Positions 20,810 to 42,670 of a stretch of 64,000 bases of DNA are shown piece by piece. Numbering within the stretch: position 1 is the first letter of the stretch; the number at the start of each line of letters is the position of its first letter. The notes beneath the pieces were generated by a model, which worked only from the letters and a program-made list of their open reading frames with translations, ran no database searches and was not told the DNA's origin. A program made the position numbers and the translations under genes. This DNA comes from Ostrea edulis (lineage: Eukaryota), in contig NC_079167.1 in assembly GCF_947568905.1 (NCBI RefSeq), forward strand, positions 80,662,001 through 80,726,000, in the 5' to 3' direction.

Positions 20810-22989
20810 TAAAACTACGAAAAGCACCTGGAGATGACTTGTTGACAAATGAACACATAATACATGGTGGTAAACTACTTATCTCCTGTCTTCTAAAGTT
20901 ATTTAACGCAATTGTAAATTGTGGTCATGTCTCCGTCTACTGGAAACGCGGTCTGATAGTTCCGTTATATAAGGGTGGCAATAAACCTAAAGATTCCTGT
21001 AACAGTTACAGACCTGTAGCCTTATTGCCTTGCTTTTTTAAGCTTTTTGAAAAAGTTATCTACAATCGTATTACTAAGTATGTTTTACACAAGAAAGATT
21101 TTCCCAACACTCAACAGCAAGGGTTCCAGAAAGAATTAGGTTGTCTGACTGCATCGTTCAATTTACATGAAACAATTTTTCATAATTTGGAACACGGTAG
21201 TAATGTTTACGTGGGGTTTCTTGATATTAGCAAAGCGTTTGACACGGTATGGAGGCCTGGTCTTATGTTTAAAATATACGAACTTGGCATCAGGGGTAAA
21301 TTATGGTCACTTATTAACCAATGTCACCAAAATACAGTGAGTTCAATTATTGTAAACCAAACCCAATCAGATTGGTTTCCTCTTAACCAAGGTGTTAGAC
21401 AGGGCGGTATGCTTTCTACCTTTTTGTACCTTGTTTTTATTAATGATCTTATTCATGAATTACAGTCGGGTAGTCTAAATACTGGCGTACTAGATATCCC
21501 TAGCAGCTGCCCCTCTTTAGCTGACGACTTGTCATTAATTGGCATATCACCACTATCGCTCCAAACAATGTTGGATATCGCTTACAACTACTCCAGTAAA
21601 TGGCGATTTACATTCAATGCGTCCAAATCCTGCGTCTTGCAATTTCGAGCTAAAGGAACAAAGTTAGGCAAATTATCGTGGCACTTAGGTCCTTCCAAAG
21701 TAACATGCGAACAGTCCTATAACCATCTAGGAATTGTTATTAACCACAAAAGCAAACTCTCGGACAGAATACAGGAATCTTGCAACAAAGGGCGTAAATC
21801 TTACTTCGCACTATCCGATCTTGGTACACAGTTTCTTAGCCCAATGACAATGTCTCATTTGTACAAATCGATCGTACTACCATCAGTGCTTTATGGATGT
21901 GAACTCTGGAGCAACATGTCATCTGTTGATAAAGTTCGACTTAACACATTCCAACACTTTATTTGCAAAAACTCCCTTCATTTACCAAAGTTATGCAGGT
22001 CAGATATGTGCGAATCACTTTTCAATGTTGTACCCATATGTGCTGAAATTGACGTGCGGAAACTTTTATTCTTTGGAAGATTATGTCGTCTGAATCCAAA
22101 AACATTAACGAAGTCAATATTTCTCGCAAGACTATTTTCCTATCTGTACAGTCTCTCCGATGTTCATTCTGGTTTTATTCCCGATATTGTGAAGACTCTT
22201 CAATCATATGATCTTGTTTCCCATTTATGGAAATTTCTGGAGGATGGATCCTTCCCTTCGAAGCTGAACTGGAAGAATATGGTACGTGGTAGAGTCATGA
22301 CCTCGCATCTATCTCAGCGTCAAATACGAATGTTGCACGACCGTGAATTTCTTTCCTTTATACAAATTTTCTCGGACTCAAAACCGTCGTCTATCTGGTT
22401 TTTAGCAAAAAACTACAAGGAAATTGAACTCTGCAAATTCATATGCAAACTGTGCACCAATTCGTGCTCAATGGACCAATTCCAAAATTGCTCTCTTTGT
22501 GGAAGGTCTTTCTCTAATGTGTTTCAACATTCCTCTTGCGCATGTCCTGCAACTGCAATTATTAGGAACAATTGGTGGAACATGATCACAAACTTTTTTG
22601 ACATACGCCTATGTGCAGAATTATGCGGATTGACAGAAAATGAAATGTTTCTTGTTCTTCTGGGGCGGTATACAATACACGAAACCAATAATCAAACCTT
22701 CCGCATACTGAACTTCAATTTTGTTCGAAGCGCAGCTGCGCATTACCAGAGAGCTCTGGCTCAGTTACAGGTATCGCCTCCCTAGCTGTCAGACACCATG
22801 CCGTTATCTGCCCCCTATCCATCACATACTTTAAGGGTAGTGTATATATGTTTATTCTTCTATATTCTTTTTGTTTGTATATATATATATATATGTCTGT
22901 TCAAAATGTAATATTCATATATATGTAATTGTATATTAACTTAATATTGCAATATCTCCACATGGAGGAAATAAAGAATGAATGAATGA
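20810..22989 (+). mobile_element. Young 5'-truncated CR1/L2-group LINE with (GAAT)n tail
   Basis: Uninterrupted RT ORF, 3' UTR ending GAGGAAATAAAGAATGAATGAATGA; endonuclease domain absent. Confidence 0.9.
20812..22785 (+). CDS. LINE ORF2 fragment: reverse transcriptase plus C-terminal CCHC domain (no own start codon)
   Basis: KAPGDD, PLYKG..YRPVALL, QQGF, FLDISKAFDTV, GVRQGGMLSTFLY, LADD, CSLC..HSSCAC. The ORF-track start at 20755 lies in the flanking repeat. Confidence 0.9.
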   Translation, partial: KLRKAPGDDLLTNEHIIHGGKLLISCLLKLFNAIVNCGHVSVYWKRGLIVPLYKGGNKPKDSCNSYRPVALLPCFFKLFEKVIYNRITKYVLHKKDFPNTQQQGFQKELGCLTASFNLHETIFHNLEHGSNVYVGFLDISKAFDTVWRPGLMFKIYELGIRGKLWSLINQCHQNTVSSIIVNQTQSDWFPLNQGVRQGGMLSTFLYLVFINDLIHELQSGSLNTGVLDIPSSCPSLADDLSLIGISPLSLQTMLDIAYNYSSKWRFTFNASKSCVLQFRAKGTKLGKLSWHLGPSKVTCEQSYNHLGIVINHKSKLSDRIQESCNKGRKSYFALSDLGTQFLSPMTMSHLYKSIVLPSVLYGCELWSNMSSVDKVRLNTFQHFICKNSLHLPKLCRSDMCESLFNVVPICAEIDVRKLLFFGRLCRLNPKTLTKSIFLARLFSYLYSLSDVHSGFIPDIVKTLQSYDLVSHLWKFLEDGSFPSKLNWKNMVRGRVMTSHLSQRQIRMLHDREFLSFIQIFSDSKPSSIWFLAKNYKEIELCKFICKLCTNSCSMDQFQNCSLCGRSFSNVFQHSSCACPATAIIRNNWWNMITNFFDIRLCAELCGLTENEMFLVLLGRYTIHETNNQTFRILNFNFVRSAAAHYQRALAQLQVSPP

Positions 22990-35000: not shown

Positions 35001-36907
35001 CATATATTTAATGATATCGTGCTTCCATACCATACGCAAGTTTAAAATGTACAAGTCCTCCTTTGACTATACAATTCAGCACTTCTCGCAAAAGTCCAGT
35101 AGGATAACTATATATGCTACATTAATACGATGCACATGTTTACATAGTTAGAATTAAAGCTTATTGCGAGTAACATTTCTAACAAACGAATTATTTGTCA
35201 TTTGACACTTATAATTTACATGTAACTGCTTTATATTCAGACGAACGCATTGAGATAGAATATCAAGTTCATTCTTGTTCAATTCAACTCTCCGACATCT
35301 CCAGTCAGCCCTATTTGTATATGACGTGCATTGCAATAGTCCTTTTTACACGTGGTCAAAATAAAATAACGGCGTCAACAAGTTTTGAATTTGAGTTTAA
35401 TGGAACAAGCATGTAGCATTGTAATTTCAGAGGATTGGTGGTTTCTCTGATTATATATAAACCTCCATAATACAAATAACACATCACTTTCCTCATTAAA
35501 TGGATTCATTCAAGTTTTTCTTGATTTAACCCAAAATATTCATAAAATAAAACTAGAACACTTGATATAGGATATCTCGCTTGCGCGAGTGCAACAAAAG
35601 TTTAATCATACACGTGTGCATGTACATAGATATCTGGAGGTTCATTATTCCACTCAACCTACAACAGAAAAAAGTGAAGCATTAATAAACCACAAATGTG
35701 TAACGTATTTTATACCATTCTCTCACCAGGGGGCGCGTAACGCAATCAACCCAAGGGCTTAACTCGAGTTACATCTGTAAAAGACACGTCATTCACAAGC
35801 ACAAACAAATACGCAACAAAACGAATTTCTTGTACAAATCACGATTAATCCGAGTTGCATCGCACGTAAACAAAAATGGCGGCACTGAGAACTTATAGGT
35901 ATCACACCGGTAATTATTTTCACTATATATTACTATAGAGGGGAAAAAATCATTAAAAATCAGTTTACAAAATTGATGCCGAATAACGCAGTCAGACACG
36001 TTCTATGTTACCTATCTCGTCTGACGACACCAGAAAAACAACACCCTACGCGGCATTTTCGAAAAAAAAAATTACCCGAAAACAAAACTACCCTCAAATC
36101 CACGTGTTTTTCACATGTGTGTAAACAGCCGGAGTGCACCTCAGGAAGTAGCCTCAGCTACCAACAGCAAATAGTTCCTTTGTATACACTTGATTATTTC
36201 TACAAATTACACAAAATTTCCTAATCAGGGGTACAAAAATTAAGAGAAAAGAAGAAGAGGAAATGAGAAAAATCGCGCAAGGAAAAAAAAAATCTTTAAA
36301 TATATGGAACTACAATTGATTAAGTTCATTTTGATTGGACAATTACCGGTGTGATACCTATAGCGAGTCAGCGCGCTGCGATCACTAAGAGAGGTCTGTG
36401 TGAGTGTGTGTGTGCTTGTGTGTGTGTGGAATTTAATTTTCTTCTATATGAAAGAAAACAAGTATAGACCCTATCATCTGACGTCACCGACATGAACCAG
36501 GTCAAACAAACTTTAAAGCTATTTAAACAAGAGCTATCACGCAGTGTATACAACCCGCACAGGACTAGACTGGAGGTCGAAAGAACGGGGAGGCCATGTT
36601 GGATTTACAGGTGAGACAAAATTTTATATACACCTTCTGGCATTACCGTGTCATTAATATCGATATTCAAGTGATCAATGAGATAGATATCTTCACTAAA
36701 ATTATAATTTCATACTATTCTGAGAAGGGGGATCGAGAGGGGTGTCGTATATCGATGACAAATACATATCAGTCCAATTTAAAGTATTAGAATCAATGTC
36801 CGTAGTTTTTCTATCTAGCTTTTCAACTGTTTTGACCTGACAAAATCTTTAATCAAGATTCATCTCTTTATTGACAGTAAACAGCTTGTGTGATCCCGAC
36901 CTCAGAA

Positions 36908-38590
36908 ATGCATCCCCGGCGCAGTGCCCAGGACGTCCTACTGTGTGACTTCTGTGAAACTGCCCCCCTACAGAGTCACTGTAAACTTTGTCATATAAAT
37001 CTCTGTGTTATCTGTGTCGGTAAACATCTCTCCGATTCCTCTAAAGATCACAATGTCGTGCCCTTTATAAAACACATAAAGTCTACCTCTAACTACCCAA
37101 AATGTCCGAAACACGCCGAAAAACATTGTGAAATGTTCTGTGAGAAATGTGCCATTCCTGTCTGTTCTACCTGCGTCACCTCAGGTGAACATGAAGGTCA
37201 CAAATTTTCAGATGTTCTGAAAAAAATCAGCTCTAAAACAGAAAGTTTACAAAAAGATTTAGAGGAACTCGAGACCAGAATTCATCCCCGATATGAAGAA
37301 ATGGCGTCCGATGTCCAAACTGAGAAAGCCGAGTTAGAAACTAAATACGGGAAACTGACAACAGCCGCCGATCAACAAGGAGAACTCTTACACCGGGAGA
37401 TTACCGCCATTGTCAACAAGCGGAAATCCGACATTGCGGAGATGAAAAACAAACACCTGGCCGCTCTCAATAAAAATACAGATGAAATTACAAACCGAAT
37501 TACAGAACTCAGACAGATCATTCAGGACCTGAAGAAAATACTGGACTCCAATGACGTCTCCTTAACCTCATCTTACAAATCTAGGAATTCCGAATTCAGA
37601 ACATTACCGTCTAAAGTCCGAGTCACATTACCGAGTTTCTCTCCTCAGAAAATAAACAAAGATCAGCTCAATGAAATGTTCGGTTCTCTGCCGCCATTAT
37701 CCATTAACACAGAACATGGCGACACAATGAAGTCAGCAGAAGCTGTATCGTCTCCTCCAGTCAAACCACTGCTTGATGAGCCGCGCATCACCGCCACCAT
37801 AGACACTGGGTATGGTAGATACGAACTACGCAGTGTTAGCTGTCTGAGTGAAGATCAAGTCTGGACACGCGGCGATAACAAAACCATGATGCTGCTCAAC
37901 CTCCAGAGTGAACTACTGACATCAATAAAAACCAAGTCAGGGAACACACCGCGGGACATAGCAGTGACACGGGACGGAGATCTTGTTTATACTGACTATC
38001 ATGATAAAACTGTTAACTTAATTAAGAATAAACAGATACAGACCGTGATCACACTACAGGGGTGGATACCCTTTAGACAGGGGTGGAGACCTCTCAATGT
38101 CTGCTGTACCGCGGCTAACAACCTCCTGGTTACCATGGAGAGTGATGATGAAACACAATCCAAAGTCGTGCGTTACTCCGGCTCCAAAGAGAAACAAAGC
38201 ATTCAGTTTGATGATCAGGGTCGTCCTCTCTATTCATCTGGTTATTATAAATACCTCAGTGAGAACAGGAACCTGGATATCTGTGTGGCTGACTGTGACG
38301 CTAGAGCAGTAGTGGTGGTCAATCAGTCAGGAAAACTCCGATTTAGATACACTGGTCATCCCTCTAATACCAAGCAACCATTTGATCCAGTCGGCATCAC
38401 TACAGACAGCCAGAGTCACATCCTGACAGCAGACAATGACCGTATCCACATCCTAGATCAGGACGGACAGTTCCTCCGTTACATTCTCTGTGGTTTAGAA
38501 GATCCATCAGGTTTATGTGTGGACATCAGAGACAACCTCTTTGTGGCTGAGTATCGCACTGCTAAAGTGAAGAAAATCCAATATCTATAA
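36908..38590 (+). CDS. RING-less TRIM-like protein (two B-boxes, coiled coil, NHL-repeat beta-propeller), 560 aa, single coding exon
   Basis: Acceptor TTGACAG at ~36878 then ATG at 36908 (MHPRRSAQDVLLCDFC..CHINLC..C..H; CPKH..CEMFCEKC..VCSTC..H..H); helical middle; C-terminal P-x-GI-x-x-D and DRIHILDQDG NHL repeats. Confidence 0.93.
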   Translation: MHPRRSAQDVLLCDFCETAPLQSHCKLCHINLCVICVGKHLSDSSKDHNVVPFIKHIKSTSNYPKCPKHAEKHCEMFCEKCAIPVCSTCVTSGEHEGHKFSDVLKKISSKTESLQKDLEELETRIHPRYEEMASDVQTEKAELETKYGKLTTAADQQGELLHREITAIVNKRKSDIAEMKNKHLAALNKNTDEITNRITELRQIIQDLKKILDSNDVSLTSSYKSRNSEFRTLPSKVRVTLPSFSPQKINKDQLNEMFGSLPPLSINTEHGDTMKSAEAVSSPPVKPLLDEPRITATIDTGYGRYELRSVSCLSEDQVWTRGDNKTMMLLNLQSELLTSIKTKSGNTPRDIAVTRDGDLVYTDYHDKTVNLIKNKQIQTVITLQGWIPFRQGWRPLNVCCTAANNLLVTMESDDETQSKVVRYSGSKEKQSIQFDDQGRPLYSSGYYKYLSENRNLDICVADCDARAVVVVNQSGKLRFRYTGHPSNTKQPFDPVGITTDSQSHILTADNDRIHILDQDGQFLRYILCGLEDPSGLCVDIRDNLFVAEYRTAKVKKIQYL

Positions 38591-38703
38591 TCACAGTGTT
38601 AATTACACATCTCAACACGGCGTTAATTACATCTACACAGTGTTAATTACATTTCTAAACACAGTGCAATTTACAGCCTTATGTTAATTACTTACTTACT
38701 TAC

Positions 38704-41701
38704 TTAGTCCTCTTCGTGCTTGTCAGCACATAAGGCCGTCACCAGAGACTTCCATGTTGGTCTGTCAGCACATAAGGCCGTCACCAGAGACTTCCATGTT
38801 GGTCTGTCTTTCGCCCATTTCTGGACCTGTCCCCAACTCCAGTTGTTATCTTTCATTTCTTTCTCCACCGATCTTCTCCAGGTCTCTCTTGGTCTTCCTC
38901 TCTTTCTCTTGTCAGTTGGTGACCATTTCAAAGCAACCCTTGGGATGGAATTTGTGTACATTCTGCATACATGTCCTATCCACAGCCATTTTCTCTTTCT
39001 GATCGTCTGGGATAGAGGAGTGGTGTTTGTCCTTTTGTACAGTTCGTCATTTGAGATGGTGTTAGGCCAGAAGATGCGCAATATTCTGCGGAGACATCGG
39101 GTCTGAAATACATCCAGCTTGTTGGAAATAGACTTGGTTACTTTCCAAGATTCAGCACCATATAGTAGGACCCCAAGCACGTTGCTCTTGAAGATCTTAA
39201 TTTTGGTGTTGGTGCTAAACTTTGTTGACCTCCAGATGTTCCGCAGAGCAGCATACGCTCCTGTGGCTTTAGAAATGCGAGCTTGTACATCTGCCTCTGA
39301 ATCCCCATCAGTGGTGATCTTACTTCCTAGGTATGGGAAGTTGGTGACATCTTCGATGTTTGTGCCATTTAAGGAGATTGGTTCCTCTGATATGGTATTG
39401 ACCTTCATGATCTTAGTTTTGGAGGTGTTTATATGAAGGCCAATTGTTTCAGCTGTTTTTGCGAGCTGGGTGGTTTTTTCTTGCATGTCTCGATGACGGT
39501 GAGATAACAGTGCAATATCGTCCGCAAAATCAAGGTCTTCAAGTACTTCTGTCATACCCCAAGTAATCCCTGTTCGTTTGCTTCTAGTTGTTTTTCGCAT
39601 AATCCAGTCGATGCAGAAGGTAAAGAGAAGAGGAGAGAGCAGACATCCCTGTTTCACTCCTGTCGTCAATTTAAACTCCTCTGATAGGCTTGATCCGCAG
39701 ATAACTCTGGCATTAAGTTCAGTGTATTGCATCTTGATGATGGAGATGATTTTATCTGGGATTCCATAATGATGAAGGATTCTTTCTAGGGCTAGGCGAT
39801 TAACACTATCAAAAGCTTTGGTGAAGTCAATGAAATTGATGTATAATGGGGAGTTCCATTCATTGCTTTGTTCTAGAATTTGTCTGAGAGCGAATATCTG
39901 ATCAGCGCACGACTTCCCTTTCCTAAAGCCTGCTTGTTCTTGACGCAGTAAGGGATTTGTTACTTCTGCAATTCTGTCCAGTATCACTCTGCTTAGAACC
40001 TTCATGGTAATAGAAAGCAACATTATTCCTCTATAGTTGTTACAATTTGAGAGGTCTCCTTTCTTTGGTAATTTAACTATAAGGCCAGTTTTCCAGAAGG
40101 ATGGTGTTTCTTCTGATTCCCAGATCTTCTGTAGGATATTTGTCAAAATTTTAGGTGTCCAGTATTCTTCGGCCTTGAGGAGCTCTGCATGTATCTGATC
40201 AATGCCTGCAGCTTTTCCATTTTTAAGTTTGGTGATTGCCTTTTTTACCTCTTCTATACTTGGTGGATCAGTATCAATATCTAATGTGTCCGTGGCTGGT
40301 AATATTATTGCTTCGTTCTCTGGGTCTTTCATATTAAATACTTCTTCAAAATGTTCCTTCCAGCGTTTCAGTATGTCTTCTTCTTTTGATAGTACATTTC
40401 CCCGTTTGTCTTTAATTGGTAGCTCTGATGACTGAAATTTGCCTGCTAATGTTTTGTAATTCGATAGAGGGTCTGCATGTCTTGTTTAGAAGCTGCTTGT
40501 TCTGCCTCATAAGCTAGCTTTTCAGTGTATGCCTTTCTGTCAGCTCTTACACTCCTCTTTACTTCCCTGTCAATAGCCCGATATTCTGCCTGGAGTTGGT
40601 CCTTTTGCCTCTTAGATTTTGTGGATAAGATTTTACTTTTCTTCTCTTTTCGTTCTTCTACTATTTTCCATGTTTTATCTGAAATCCATTCTTCTTTTTT
40701 CTTTCTCTTTGGGCCAAGTATTTGTTGACTATTTTCTATTAATACCTTGTTAAAAGTTTCCATATCGATTTCATCAGGATGTTCCATGAGTGTTGAAAAC
40801 TTGTTCTGGATTTTTAATTGAAAAGATCTCAGGGTTTTTGTATCTTTGAGTTTTTGGATGTTGATTGGAGGTGGTCTTTGATCTTTTTTCCTTGATTTCC
40901 TCAGTTTTAACTTGATTTTTGCCAGTACTAAAGAGTGGTCACTTCCCATATCAGCCCTTGTTTTGCAACCACATCGAGAAGACTACTTCTCCATCTCTTG
41001 TTGACGATAATATGGTCAATTTGGTTCTTTGTATGACCATCTGGTGAGTTCCATGTCTTATGGATGTCTTTGTGCATGAATATAGTTCCACCAATTACTA
41101 GGTCGTTTTCTTGGCAGAAAGTGCATAGTCTCTCTCCGTTGTTGTTACACTCTCCTATTCCTTGCTGGCCCATGATGGTTTCTTTACCTTGGTTGCATTT
41201 TCCAACTTTAGCATTTAAGTCTCCAAGGATAAGCAGAACATCATGAGATGGTGTGTCGTCTACTACATTTTGTAGGCTGTCATAGAAAGATATTTTCTCT
41301 TCATCTTCTGCATCATCTGTTGGTGCATAGCAAACCACAGCAGTCAATTTGGCGAAGACTGAGTTGTACCTTGCTGTTATTATTCGCTCACTCACAGGTT
41401 TCCATTCTAGAAGACTTCTGTGGACCTCCTTTGTTGTAATAATGGCTACTCCTTTGCTATGATGGTCGTCGGTTCTTCCAGAGTAGAGTATCTGATGTCC
41501 AGATACTAGTTGTTTTCATCCACTACCTGTCCATCTGGCTTCACTAACTCCTAGGAGCTCGATCTTGTAATGCTCCATTTCTCTCACCACTTGTGCTAGT
41601 TTTCCTGTTTGGTAGAGGGTCCGCACGTTCCAGCAGCCCACTCTACGGATTATTTTCGGTCGAAGGACATCTCCTATCGGGATGGATGATTCACCCGTCA
41701 T
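38704..41701 (-). pseudogene. RTE ORF2 (APE endonuclease plus reverse transcriptase)
   Basis: In-frame TGA at 41516-41518, two apparent single-base frameshifts near 40950 and 40460; RT part 38704-40332 is open. Confidence 0.92.
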
Positions 41702-42069
41702 ACTTCCAGTGTCCTGAATGGTGTCAATCCTTCTTCCATCATTTTGTTCTCTGGTTAAGGTTTCAGTAGCGTCTTTTGTTTAACATGTTAGGGTTGCTGG
41801 CCCTAAGCATAACCCCCTGAACTCGGAGGACCAGTGGTTTTCTGTTGGGGTTGTCCTTCCCTTAGATGATTGCTTTCCCTTGCTTTCGTGTTCATCTACA
41901 CAGATTTTCTTTCTGGATTTTCTTCCATAGCCTTTGACTTGCCAAAGCCATCCACAAGGCAGTGGAACTATTTGACCCATAGATGGGGCAAGGTTGGTGA
42001 GAACCAGGGCATGTCCACGCGCAGGTGGGCCTGCACTCTGCACCTCTAGGGTCCTTACTACTCCGAGAT

Positions 42070-42302
42070 CCCCTTCATGTTAGCCTTGAGTGCTAGACCC
42101 AAAATTCCGTGTGTTGCCCCGAGGAGGCGTTTGAAGGAGTCTAAGTAATGTAGAGGCTATGTACTGGCAGGGCGAGATTTCTGCTTTCGCTACTTTCCCT
42201 TTCACCTACAAGTAGGCTAGCCAGCGGCAGTAAGGATCTATAGGCGTTTGATCTTTACCGCACTAGACGCATATCATTACTCTGTGATAAACACCAACAC
42301 AC
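42070..42302 (-). ncRNA. HDV-like self-cleaving ribozyme at the RTE 5' end
   Basis: P1 GUGUGUU (42302-42296)/AACACAC (42115-42109); P2 CUCCUUCA (42139-42132)/UGAAGGGG (42077-42070); P3 GCC/GGC with L3 UCCUCGG; P1.1 CC/GG (42108-42107); P4 UUUGGGU/ACUCAAG; J4/2 GCUAA with candidate catalytic C at 42083; J1/2 156 nt. Confidence 0.8.
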
Positions 42303-42399
42303 TATGTTAATTACAGTGCCATGTTAATTACAGTTCTGTGTTAATTACAGTTCCTTGTTAATTACAGCCCTGGGTTTGTGAGTGTAATTAACGTGTTCT

Positions 42400-42670
42400 T
42401 GTGTTTGTGTGTGTAAGGATAGAACACTAGTCTCTCACTGCTGTTTAGTAATTATACCTTACAATATCTGTATTATAATTAATGAGACACTGTTAATCTT
42501 AGTATACTAATTACATGTACTTATCTATTGACACAGTAGTTGTGTGTTTGTGTGTGTACGGATAGAACATTAGTCTCTCGCTGCTGTTTAGTAATTATAT
42601 CGTACAATATCTGTATCATTATAATTAATGAGACATGATTTATCTTCGTATACTAATTACTTATTTGACT
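42400..42670. repeat. ~135-bp tandem duplication downstream of the TRIM gene
   Basis: GTGTTTGTGTGTGTA(A/C)GGATAGAACA(C/T)TAGTCTCTC..TATACTAATTAC occurs twice. Confidence 0.8.

What the first reader, a model, noticed from the sequence alone, without database searches (positions are those of the whole stretch)
42070..42302. HDV-like ribozyme whose predicted cleavage site is exactly the first base of the RTE
All nested double-pseudoknot elements are readable (7-bp P1, 8-bp P2, P3 with L3 UCCUCGG close to HDV's UCCUCGCU, P1.1, P4, GCUAA J4/2). G1 at 42302 is immediately adjacent to the TSD, which independently marks the 5' boundary. HDV-like ribozymes are established in RTE, R2 and L1Tc 5' UTRs, but this one has a 156-nt J1/2 and a non-canonical 3x2-nt gap at the P2/P3 junction, so it may be an undescribed molluscan variant. 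If active it would also cut any antisense read-through transcript entering the TRIM locus.
Basis: partly seen in the sequence, partly recalled or inferred. Interest (0 to 1): 0.8.

Follow-up and report, generated by a model that had tools for sequence, protein, structure and literature searches.

The report
HDV-like ribozyme heading an RTE retrotransposon
The first 233-237 bases of this dead RTE jumping gene fold as a hepatitis-delta-type self-cutting RNA whose cut site is the element's first base; this device is already known for such elements, and here one shared head sits on several distantly related RTE lineages.

Summary
Observation confirmed; main interpretation supported; the novelty claim is not.

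- **Element.** Minus strand 42302 to about 38690 is an RTE-type non-LTR retrotransposon. This copy is 98-99% identical to its family but frameshifted.
- **Covariation.** Across 51 distinct copies in five lineages of this genome, P1, P2 and P4 covary. Examples are G1-C / G1.U / A1-U, and a paired 1-nt insertion in P2. P3, the L3 motif UCCNCG and the J4/2 cytosine (C42083) are conserved; that C is in 51 of 51 copies.
- **5' boundary.** In 8 of 10 full-length insertions checked, a 7-14 bp target-site duplication (12-14 bp in seven) abuts the first base of P1. One of these is from the lineage that starts with A.
- **J1/2.** The 156-nt J1/2 is not a new variant. It is a closed domain with a covarying closing helix beside an extendable P2. 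This matches the design described for the mosquito RTE ribozymes drz-Agam-2. R2 elements have J1/2 loops of 216-498 nt.
- **Rfam.** No Rfam model detects it.
- **New here.** Lineages only 44-50% identical in protein share this head at 77-82% nucleotide identity. Their nearest protein relatives elsewhere carry twister heads. The ribozyme head therefore behaves as a swappable module.
- **Earlier scan notes.** The scan already noted HDV-like and twister heads on other RTEs of this genome.
- **Missing.** No cleavage assay.

The parts
38688..42302 (-). RTE-type non-LTR retrotransposon, family A, decayed copy. It is 98.2-98.8% identical to other copies. It has 1-nt deletions near 40958 and 40456 and a 42-nt tandem duplication at 38721-38808.
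   Evidence: Pfam Exo_endo_phos_2, RVT_1 and DUF6451; copies in the genome; comparison with intact copies
42303..42314 (-). 5' target-site duplication GTAATTAACATA, directly upstream of G1
38680..38691 (-). 3' copy of the target-site duplication. Its first bases overlap the (GTAA)n tail, so the exact 3' end is ambiguous by up to 4 nt.
42296..42302 (-). P1 5' strand GUGUGUU; the predicted cleavage is 5' of G42302
42140..42295 (-). J1/2 domain, 156 nt. It has a small hairpin (about 42294-42284), then a closing helix 42281-42275 with 42150-42144, then 1 nt, then AGA (42142-40), which can pair with UCU 42068-66 to extend P2.
   Evidence: RNAalifold with two compensatory columns in the closing helix; single-sequence fold; per-lineage check
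42132..42139 (-). P2 5' strand CUCCUUCA
42116..42128 (-). P3 (GCC/GGC) enclosing L3 UCCUCGG
42107..42115 (-). P1 3' strand AACACAC, followed by the GG of P1.1
42085..42103 (-). P4 hairpin, 7 bp with loop CUAGC. This copy has U.G instead of C-G at its base.
42078..42084 (-). J4/2 GCUAACA; the candidate catalytic cytosine is C42083
   Evidence: C present in 51 of 51 copies
42066..42077 (-). P2 3' strand UGAAGGGG (42077-42070), a bulged A, then UCU as the optional P2 extension

Best explanation
The 5' end of this RTE family encodes an HDV-like (nested double-pseudoknot) self-cleaving ribozyme.

When the element is transcribed as part of a longer minus-strand transcript, P1 forms between nt 1-7 and nt 188-194. 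The L3/P1.1/J4/2 core then places C220 (window 42083) at the scissile phosphate. The RNA cuts itself immediately 5' of nt 1 (G42302). This releases an element RNA whose first base is the first base of P1. That RNA is the template for target-primed reverse transcription, so new copies start exactly there.

The 156-nt J1/2 is a closed structured domain. Together with an extendable P2 it holds the outer ends of P1 and P2 together.

Shown here: the fold, its covariation, its conservation, and the coincidence of +1 with insertion boundaries. Inferred: catalysis itself, co-transcription, and the role of J1/2.

The window copy keeps every pair, so it is probably still able to cleave. Its protein frame is broken, so it is not an autonomous element.
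For: **5' boundary.**
- At least 40 genomic matches mostly begin at query position 29, which is window 42302, with unrelated flanks.
- A TSD abuts the first P1 base at offset 0 in the window copy, L061, L062, L063, L065, L067, L068 and L070 (7 bp exact in L065, 12-14 bp in the other seven). L067 belongs to the lineage that starts with A1.

**Pairing.**
- 88% of pair cells are standard pairs, against 27-47% when the partners are slid by 1-3 columns.
- On the model-fitted core alignment, 94% are paired. The covariation score is 0.251, against 0.122 shuffled (0 of 500 shuffles as high) and 0.025-0.075 slid. Seven pairs show double changes.

**Specific compensations.**
- P1 position 1: GC 30, AU 9, GU 4.
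- P1 position 4: UA 18, CG 9, UG 21.
- P2: CG 39, AU 9, plus a matched insertion that gives a 10-bp P2 in lineage B3.
- P4: UA 18 / GC 28, and GC 17 / AU 21.

**Conserved core.** C220 is in 51 of 51 copies, L3 U178 in 51 of 51, C180 in 51 of 51, and G183 in 48 of 51.

**J1/2.** The closing helix has two compensatory columns, each in 11 of 30 sequences.

**Outside this genome.** An external RTE contig (L077) carries a core with the same architecture but entirely different helix sequences (E 0.019).

**Literature.** HDV-like ribozymes at the 5' ends of RTE and other non-LTR elements, cleaving at the element junction, are established (PMC3774820, PMC6765202). Structured J1/2 plus a long P2 activates large members (PMC4908430).
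Against: - No biochemical assay and no RNA 5'-end data.
- No Rfam HDV-like model matches, even at E<=10. RF01788 finds nothing in the genome.
- The base pair at the cleavage site is G-C in family A. It is G.U only in some lineages.
- P1.1 is reduced to one G-C pair in lineages B2 and B3.
- The J1/2 fold energy alone is not significant (z = -1.19).
- The copies are related, so cell counts overstate the number of independent events. There are about five lineages.
- A loose descriptor hits by chance about 0.8 times per window.
Confidence: 0.87

Rival explanations
1. The conserved 5' region is a structured leader, acting as an internal promoter at the DNA level or as an IRES-like or protein-binding RNA. 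It does not self-cleave. The uniform 5' end would then come from a fixed transcription start at +1.
For: - The J1/2 domain is as conserved as the catalytic core between lineages: 73-82% against 66-83%.
- Long blocks are invariant without any covariation.
- L1Tc combines a promoter and a ribozyme in the same 77 nt (PMC3383444 abstract).
- No Rfam hit.
Against: - A promoter does not explain compensatory changes in three helices that cross in a pseudoknot.
- It does not explain the invariant J4/2 C and the UCCNCG L3.
- It does not explain why +1 changes from G to A together with its P1 partner changing from C to U, with the TSD still abutting it.
- The two functions are not exclusive.
Confidence: 0.07
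2. The ribozyme is real for the family, but this particular copy no longer cleaves.
For: - The copy is decayed, with frameshifts near 40958 and 40456.
- It differs from the six-fold identical family version by two adjacent substitutions at 42105-42103. These change A to U in J1.1/4 and C-G to U.G at the base of P4.
Against:
- The core residues are unchanged.
- J1.1/4 and P4 vary freely between lineages.
Confidence: 0.2
3. The fold is a chance match in a repeat.
For: A loose descriptor yields 0.77 hits per shuffled window.
Against: - A strict descriptor gives 0 hits in 1000 shuffles.
- Covariation.
- TSD boundaries.
Confidence: 0.02

Closest known systems
drz-Agam-2 family (Anopheles gambiae, RTE-associated large HDV-like ribozymes; Rfam RF01788; PMC4908430)
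   Same: - Sits at the head of an RTE-type element.
- HDV-like core.
- Long structured J1/2 (P1.2-type) domain, joined by short linkers.
- P2 longer than the usual 7 bp; here 8-10 bp, plus an optional 3-bp extension.
   Different: - No detectable sequence or model similarity. RF01788, a 191-position model, finds nothing in this genome.
- J1/2 here is a multi-branch 156-nt domain, not one helix.
- Different phylum.
- Activity is untested.
R2 element HDV-like ribozymes (PMC3774820)
   Same: - Processes the element RNA out of a co-transcript.
- L3/P3/P1.1 are conserved while P1 covaries.
- J1/2 loops are large (216-498 nt in silkmoths).
   Different: - R2 often cuts upstream, in the 28S sequence. 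Here the cut is at the element's first base.
- R2 J1/2 loops share little sequence between species. Here J1/2 is 73-82% conserved across lineages.
- P4 is present here.
Twister-headed RTEs (Perere-3 of Schistosoma, PMC8501958; the remark on RTEs in PMC7761336)
   Same: - Same position and presumed job: 5' trimming of an RTE RNA.
- Found on the nearest protein relatives of this very family.
   Different: A different ribozyme class.
L1Tc ribozyme/Pr77 (PMC3185411, PMC3383444)
   Same: An HDV-like ribozyme whose +1 is the element's first base.
   Different: - 77 nt with a short J1/2.
- Doubles as an internal promoter, which is not tested here.

Membership tests
HDV-like self-cleaving ribozymes | Nested double pseudoknot: P1, P2, P3, P4 in HDV order, with P1 and P2 crossing | tested here: met
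   - All helices are present.
- P1, P2 and P4 show compensatory changes.
- P3 is nearly invariant, so it says nothing either way.
HDV-like self-cleaving ribozymes | P1.1: two nucleotides after the P1 3' strand pair with CC of L3 | tested here: met
   GG/CC in the window copy and in lineages A, A' and B1. Only one G-C pair is possible (GU) in B2 and B3.
HDV-like self-cleaving ribozymes | Catalytic cytosine in J4/2, followed by purine-rich nucleotides before P2 | tested here: met
   C220 (42083) is in 51 of 51 copies. The context is GC-U(G)AA.
HDV-like self-cleaving ribozymes | L3 with the conserved U...G (reverse wobble) and CC | tested here: met
   L3 is UCCNCG(G/U). U178 is in 51 of 51 copies and G183 in 48 of 51. 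The feature is as described in PMC3774820.
HDV-like self-cleaving ribozymes | Cleavage immediately 5' of the first P1 nucleotide | tested here: inconclusive
   The evidence is indirect only. TSDs abut +1 in 8 of 10 full-length insertions checked, across three lineages. No RNA or biochemical data.
HDV-like self-cleaving ribozymes | G.U wobble at the cleavage-site base pair, as in HDV itself | tested here: not met
   G-C in family A, including this copy. G.U in A', L012, L023 and L060. A-U in the B1' lineage. This is a feature of HDV proper and not a requirement of the wider family (my own knowledge, not checked in a paper here).
HDV-like self-cleaving ribozymes | Match to a curated Rfam HDV-like covariance model | tested here: not met
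   No hit at gathering score or at E<=10. RF01788 finds nothing genome-wide. This is expected with a 156-nt insertion. It is a detection criterion and not a defining one.
HDV-like self-cleaving ribozymes | Divalent-ion-dependent self-scission giving 2',3'-cyclic phosphate and 5'-OH | not testable with these tools
   Needs a bench assay.
RTE-type non-LTR retrotransposon | A single long ORF with an AP-type endonuclease and reverse transcriptase, a short microsatellite-like 3' tail, and TSDs | tested here: met
   - Pfam PF14529/PF03372, PF00078 and PF20049.
- (GTAA)n tail.
- TSDs of 12-14 bp in seven of the ten checked insertions.
- An intact 1108-codon frame in L061.
- Clade placement against named RTE references was not done.

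The most novel reading that the evidence does not exclude
The 5' ribozyme head is an exchangeable cassette.

One head of about 330-530 nt comprises the HDV-like ribozyme, its structured J1/2 and the leader. It sits on at least four RTE lineages of one genome whose proteins are only 44-50% identical. Their nearest protein relatives elsewhere carry twister heads.

So RTEs repeatedly capture or swap ribozyme heads, probably by template switching or recombination between co-expressed element RNAs. The high conservation of J1/2 may in addition mark a second function, such as translation start or protein binding.
Probability: 0.6. Interest if true: 0.55.

Novelty: new member of a known kind. Interest (0 to 1): 0.42.

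Why it matters
This is a well-documented mollusc example of ribozyme-defined 5' ends in RTE elements. The evidence is natural covariation plus insertion boundaries at single-base resolution, including a G1-to-A1 switch with its compensating partner.

The more useful point is evolutionary. Ribozyme class (HDV-like against twister) does not follow the protein tree. The same HDV-like head is shared by deeply diverged lineages. That makes 5'-head exchange between LINE lineages directly testable.

It also offers a natural series of J1/2 and P2 variants for the 'pinch' model of large HDV-like ribozymes.

For genome annotation, Rfam models miss this whole class, which has at least 120 cores in this genome.

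Tried and rejected
- **Rfam.** Gathering score and E<=10 gave no HDV-like hit. RF01788 against the whole genome gave none.
- **Papers.** Ruminski 2011, Webb 2009 and Cerrone-Szakal 2008 are not held. Statements about them rest on papers that cite them.
- **Further genome cores.** Model R2 found at least 120 cores, including groups at 75, 68-73, 53 and 45-50 bits that look like further lineages. I did not try another route.
- **External contigs.** Those of the relatives of B1 and B2 (L080-L082), plus L074 and L079, gave neither an HDV-like core, nor a twister, nor a descriptor hit. Their heads are undetermined and possibly truncated.
- **J1/2 fold energy.** Not significant on its own.
- **Other descriptor hits.** The hits at 22243(+) and 34684/34592(-) have A/U-rich P1.1 and no HDV-like L3. 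I take them as chance.
- **Nearby ORFs.** ORFs at 44.6-46.5 kb and at 54.4 kb have no Pfam match. The upstream transcription context of this copy stays unknown.

Full report
**What is there**

On the minus strand, window 42302 down to about 38690 is a non-LTR retrotransposon.
- Its ORF pieces hit Exo_endo_phos_2, RVT_1 and DUF6451.
- The element ends in a (GTAA)n tail.
- It is flanked by the 12-bp duplication GTAATTAACATA, at 42314-42303 and at about 38691-38680.
- It inserted into a 17-22-nt minisatellite just past the stop codon of a plus-strand B-box/NHL (TRIM-like) ORF at 36890-38590.
- It is a young but dead copy. It is 98.2-98.8% identical over 3.5 kb to other copies. It has 1-nt deletions near 40958 and 40456 and a 42-nt tandem duplication at 38721-38808.
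- A sister copy, L061, has an uninterrupted 1108-codon frame.

**The fold**

- P1: 1-7 with 188-194
- J1/2: 156 nt
- P2: 164-171 with 226-233
- P3: GCC/GGC
- L3: UCCUCGG
- P1.1: CC/GG
- P4: 7 bp
- J4/2: GCUAACA, with C220 = window 42083

Being able to read the fold is weak evidence on its own.
- A loose descriptor allowing J1/2 up to 200 nt hits 0.77 times per shuffled window. It also gives two junk hits in the real one.
- A descriptor at the observed stringency finds only this site, and none in 1000 shuffles. Its thresholds were set post hoc.

**Evidence from copies**

The genome holds at least 40 matches to the 5' region. Most start at the base equivalent to 42302, with unrelated flanks. The 51 distinct 5' ends fall into five lineages: A (this copy), A', B1 (with a B1' branch), B2 and B3. 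They are 77-99% identical to each other.

| Measure | Observed | Control |
|---|---|---|
| Pair cells that are standard pairs | 88% | 27-47% with partners slid 1-3 columns |
| Pair cells paired, model-fitted core alignment | 94% | 27.6-53.0% slid |
| Covariation score | 0.251 | 0.122 shuffled (0 of 500 as high); 0.025-0.075 slid |

Compensatory changes are explicit:
- P1 position 1 is G-C (30 copies), A-U (9) or G.U (4).
- P1 position 4 is U-A, C-G or U.G.
- P2 has C-G to A-U and U-A to A-U changes.
- B3 has a matched one-base insertion on both strands, giving a 10-bp P2.
- P4 has U-A to G-C and G-C to A-U changes.

The J4/2 cytosine is present in 51 of 51 copies, L3 U178 and C180 in 51 of 51, and G183 in 48 of 51.

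The copies are related. The independent events number about five lineages, not 51 sequences.

**The 5' boundary**

Ten full-length insertions were checked. In eight of them a target-site duplication touches the first P1 base with no extra bases: 7 bp exact in L065 and 12-14 bp in the other seven. These are the window copy, L061, L062, L063, L065, L067, L068 and L070.

L067 belongs to the B1' branch. There the element starts with A, and the P1 partner is U rather than C. So the boundary moved with the helix.

This is what processing at the predicted site would produce. It is still indirect evidence. A fixed transcription start at +1 cannot be excluded without RNA data, and the two are not exclusive.

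**J1/2**

The 156-nt J1/2 is not an odd spacer.
- It folds as a closed domain: a small hairpin directly after P1, then a 7-bp closing helix. That helix is AGUAAUG/CAUUACU in A and GGUAGUG/CACUACC in B, with two compensatory columns.
- One nucleotide later comes AGA, which can pair with UCU beyond P2.
- R2 ribozymes have J1/2 loops of 216-498 nt, and P1 and P1' can be more than 700 nt apart (PMC3774820).
- The '3x2 gap' at P2/P3 exists only in lineage A. B lineages have 1x0.

So neither feature defines a new variant. Rfam models do not see this RNA, which is a detection gap.

**Beyond the finding: heads do not follow the protein tree**

- Lineages A, A', B1, B2 and B3 share the first 330-530 nt at 77-82% nucleotide identity. 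Their ORFs are only 44-50% identical in protein.
- J1/2 is as conserved as the core: 73-82% against 66-83%.
- The nearest proteins of lineage A in public assemblies are P0001, P0002, P0004 and P0005, at 59-71% identity. The nearest of A' is P0114. Another relative is P0007. All of these lie on contigs whose 5' leaders match the twister-P1 model at 36-55 bits (E from 7e-10 to 2e-4). That is below the 67.2-bit gathering score, as expected for truncated RTE variants.
- The contig of P0006 starts with an HDV-like core of the same architecture but different helices (E 0.019).
- On a protein tree, A sits inside a fully supported twister-headed clade, A' pairs with a twister-headed element, and P0006 pairs with P0007. 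Head type needs 5 changes for 6 HDV rows.
- Forcing the five HDV-headed rows of this genome into one clade costs 451 log-likelihood units (p-AU 1e-105). The group was defined by head type, but I tested it after seeing the tree.

Whichever direction the replacements went, ribozyme heads have been swapped between RTE lineages several times. The external contigs come from unidentified organisms in metagenome assemblies, and five of twelve have undetermined heads.

**Relation to earlier notes of this scan**

Notes on other windows of this genome already report the following:
- HDV-like heads on other RTEs (s1-292107, s1-281890)
- a twister head on an RTE (s1-271454)
- an HDV-like core in another LINE (s1-301833)

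So the scan has found this kind of thing before, on other DNA. Those notes call the genome an oyster. I did not verify the species.

**Verdict**

This is a genuine, well-supported HDV-like ribozyme head of an RTE family, and a new member of a known kind. Catalysis is untested. The window copy probably still folds. It differs from the family version by two adjacent substitutions at 42105-42103 (an A-to-U change in J1.1/4 and a C-G to U.G change at the base of P4), and every pair is kept. It belongs to a dead element.

Cleavage at 42302 would not end transcription.

Noticed in passing
window 41980-41780 (minus); element nt 323-523 in WIN, L062-L064: A 66-codon leader ORF (ATG at nt 323) ends in a TAA at nt 521-523. 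That stop lies in the same frame as the downstream endonuclease-RT ORF. In L061 the stop reads TAC, which gives one 1108-codon frame. This suggests read-through or re-initiation between a mini-ORF1 and ORF2. The frame is already open from nt 224, right after the UAA of J4/2.
   Followed up: partly
window 42304-42367 and 38588-38675: The element inserted into a minisatellite with 17-24-nt units containing TGTAATTAACA. The array now lies on both sides of the element, directly after the stop codon of the TRIM-like ORF. This makes the TSD of this copy partly ambiguous.
   Followed up: partly
window 42400-42660: A 143-nt tandem repeat, 1.8 copies at 89% identity, just upstream of the element on the minus strand.
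   Followed up: no
window 38721-38808: A perfect 42-nt tandem duplication inside the 3' end of the RT ORF. It is absent from L063.
   Followed up: yes
window 48979-49051 (+): A tRNA-like match just above the Rfam threshold (31 bits against 29), with several non-standard pairs. It could be a SINE head or a tRNA pseudogene.
   Followed up: no
L072 1125-1179, L073 307-361, L075 275-329, L076 134-190, L078 1311-1389, L083 391-445: RTE elements in public metagenome assemblies carry nearly identical twister-P1-like heads (36-55 bits, below the Rfam gathering score of 67.2) upstream of their ORFs. These are the closest protein relatives of the HDV-headed family studied here.
   Followed up: partly
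G000, 120 places listed: The core model finds at least 120 HDV-like cores of this type in the genome. Among them is a group of more than 12 hits with the same 53.0-bit score, probably another lineage. They could not be fetched.
   Followed up: no
3' ends of L061-L070: Tail repeats differ by lineage: (GTAA)n in A and B1, (GGTA)n in B2. L061 has an irregular A-rich tail.
   Followed up: no
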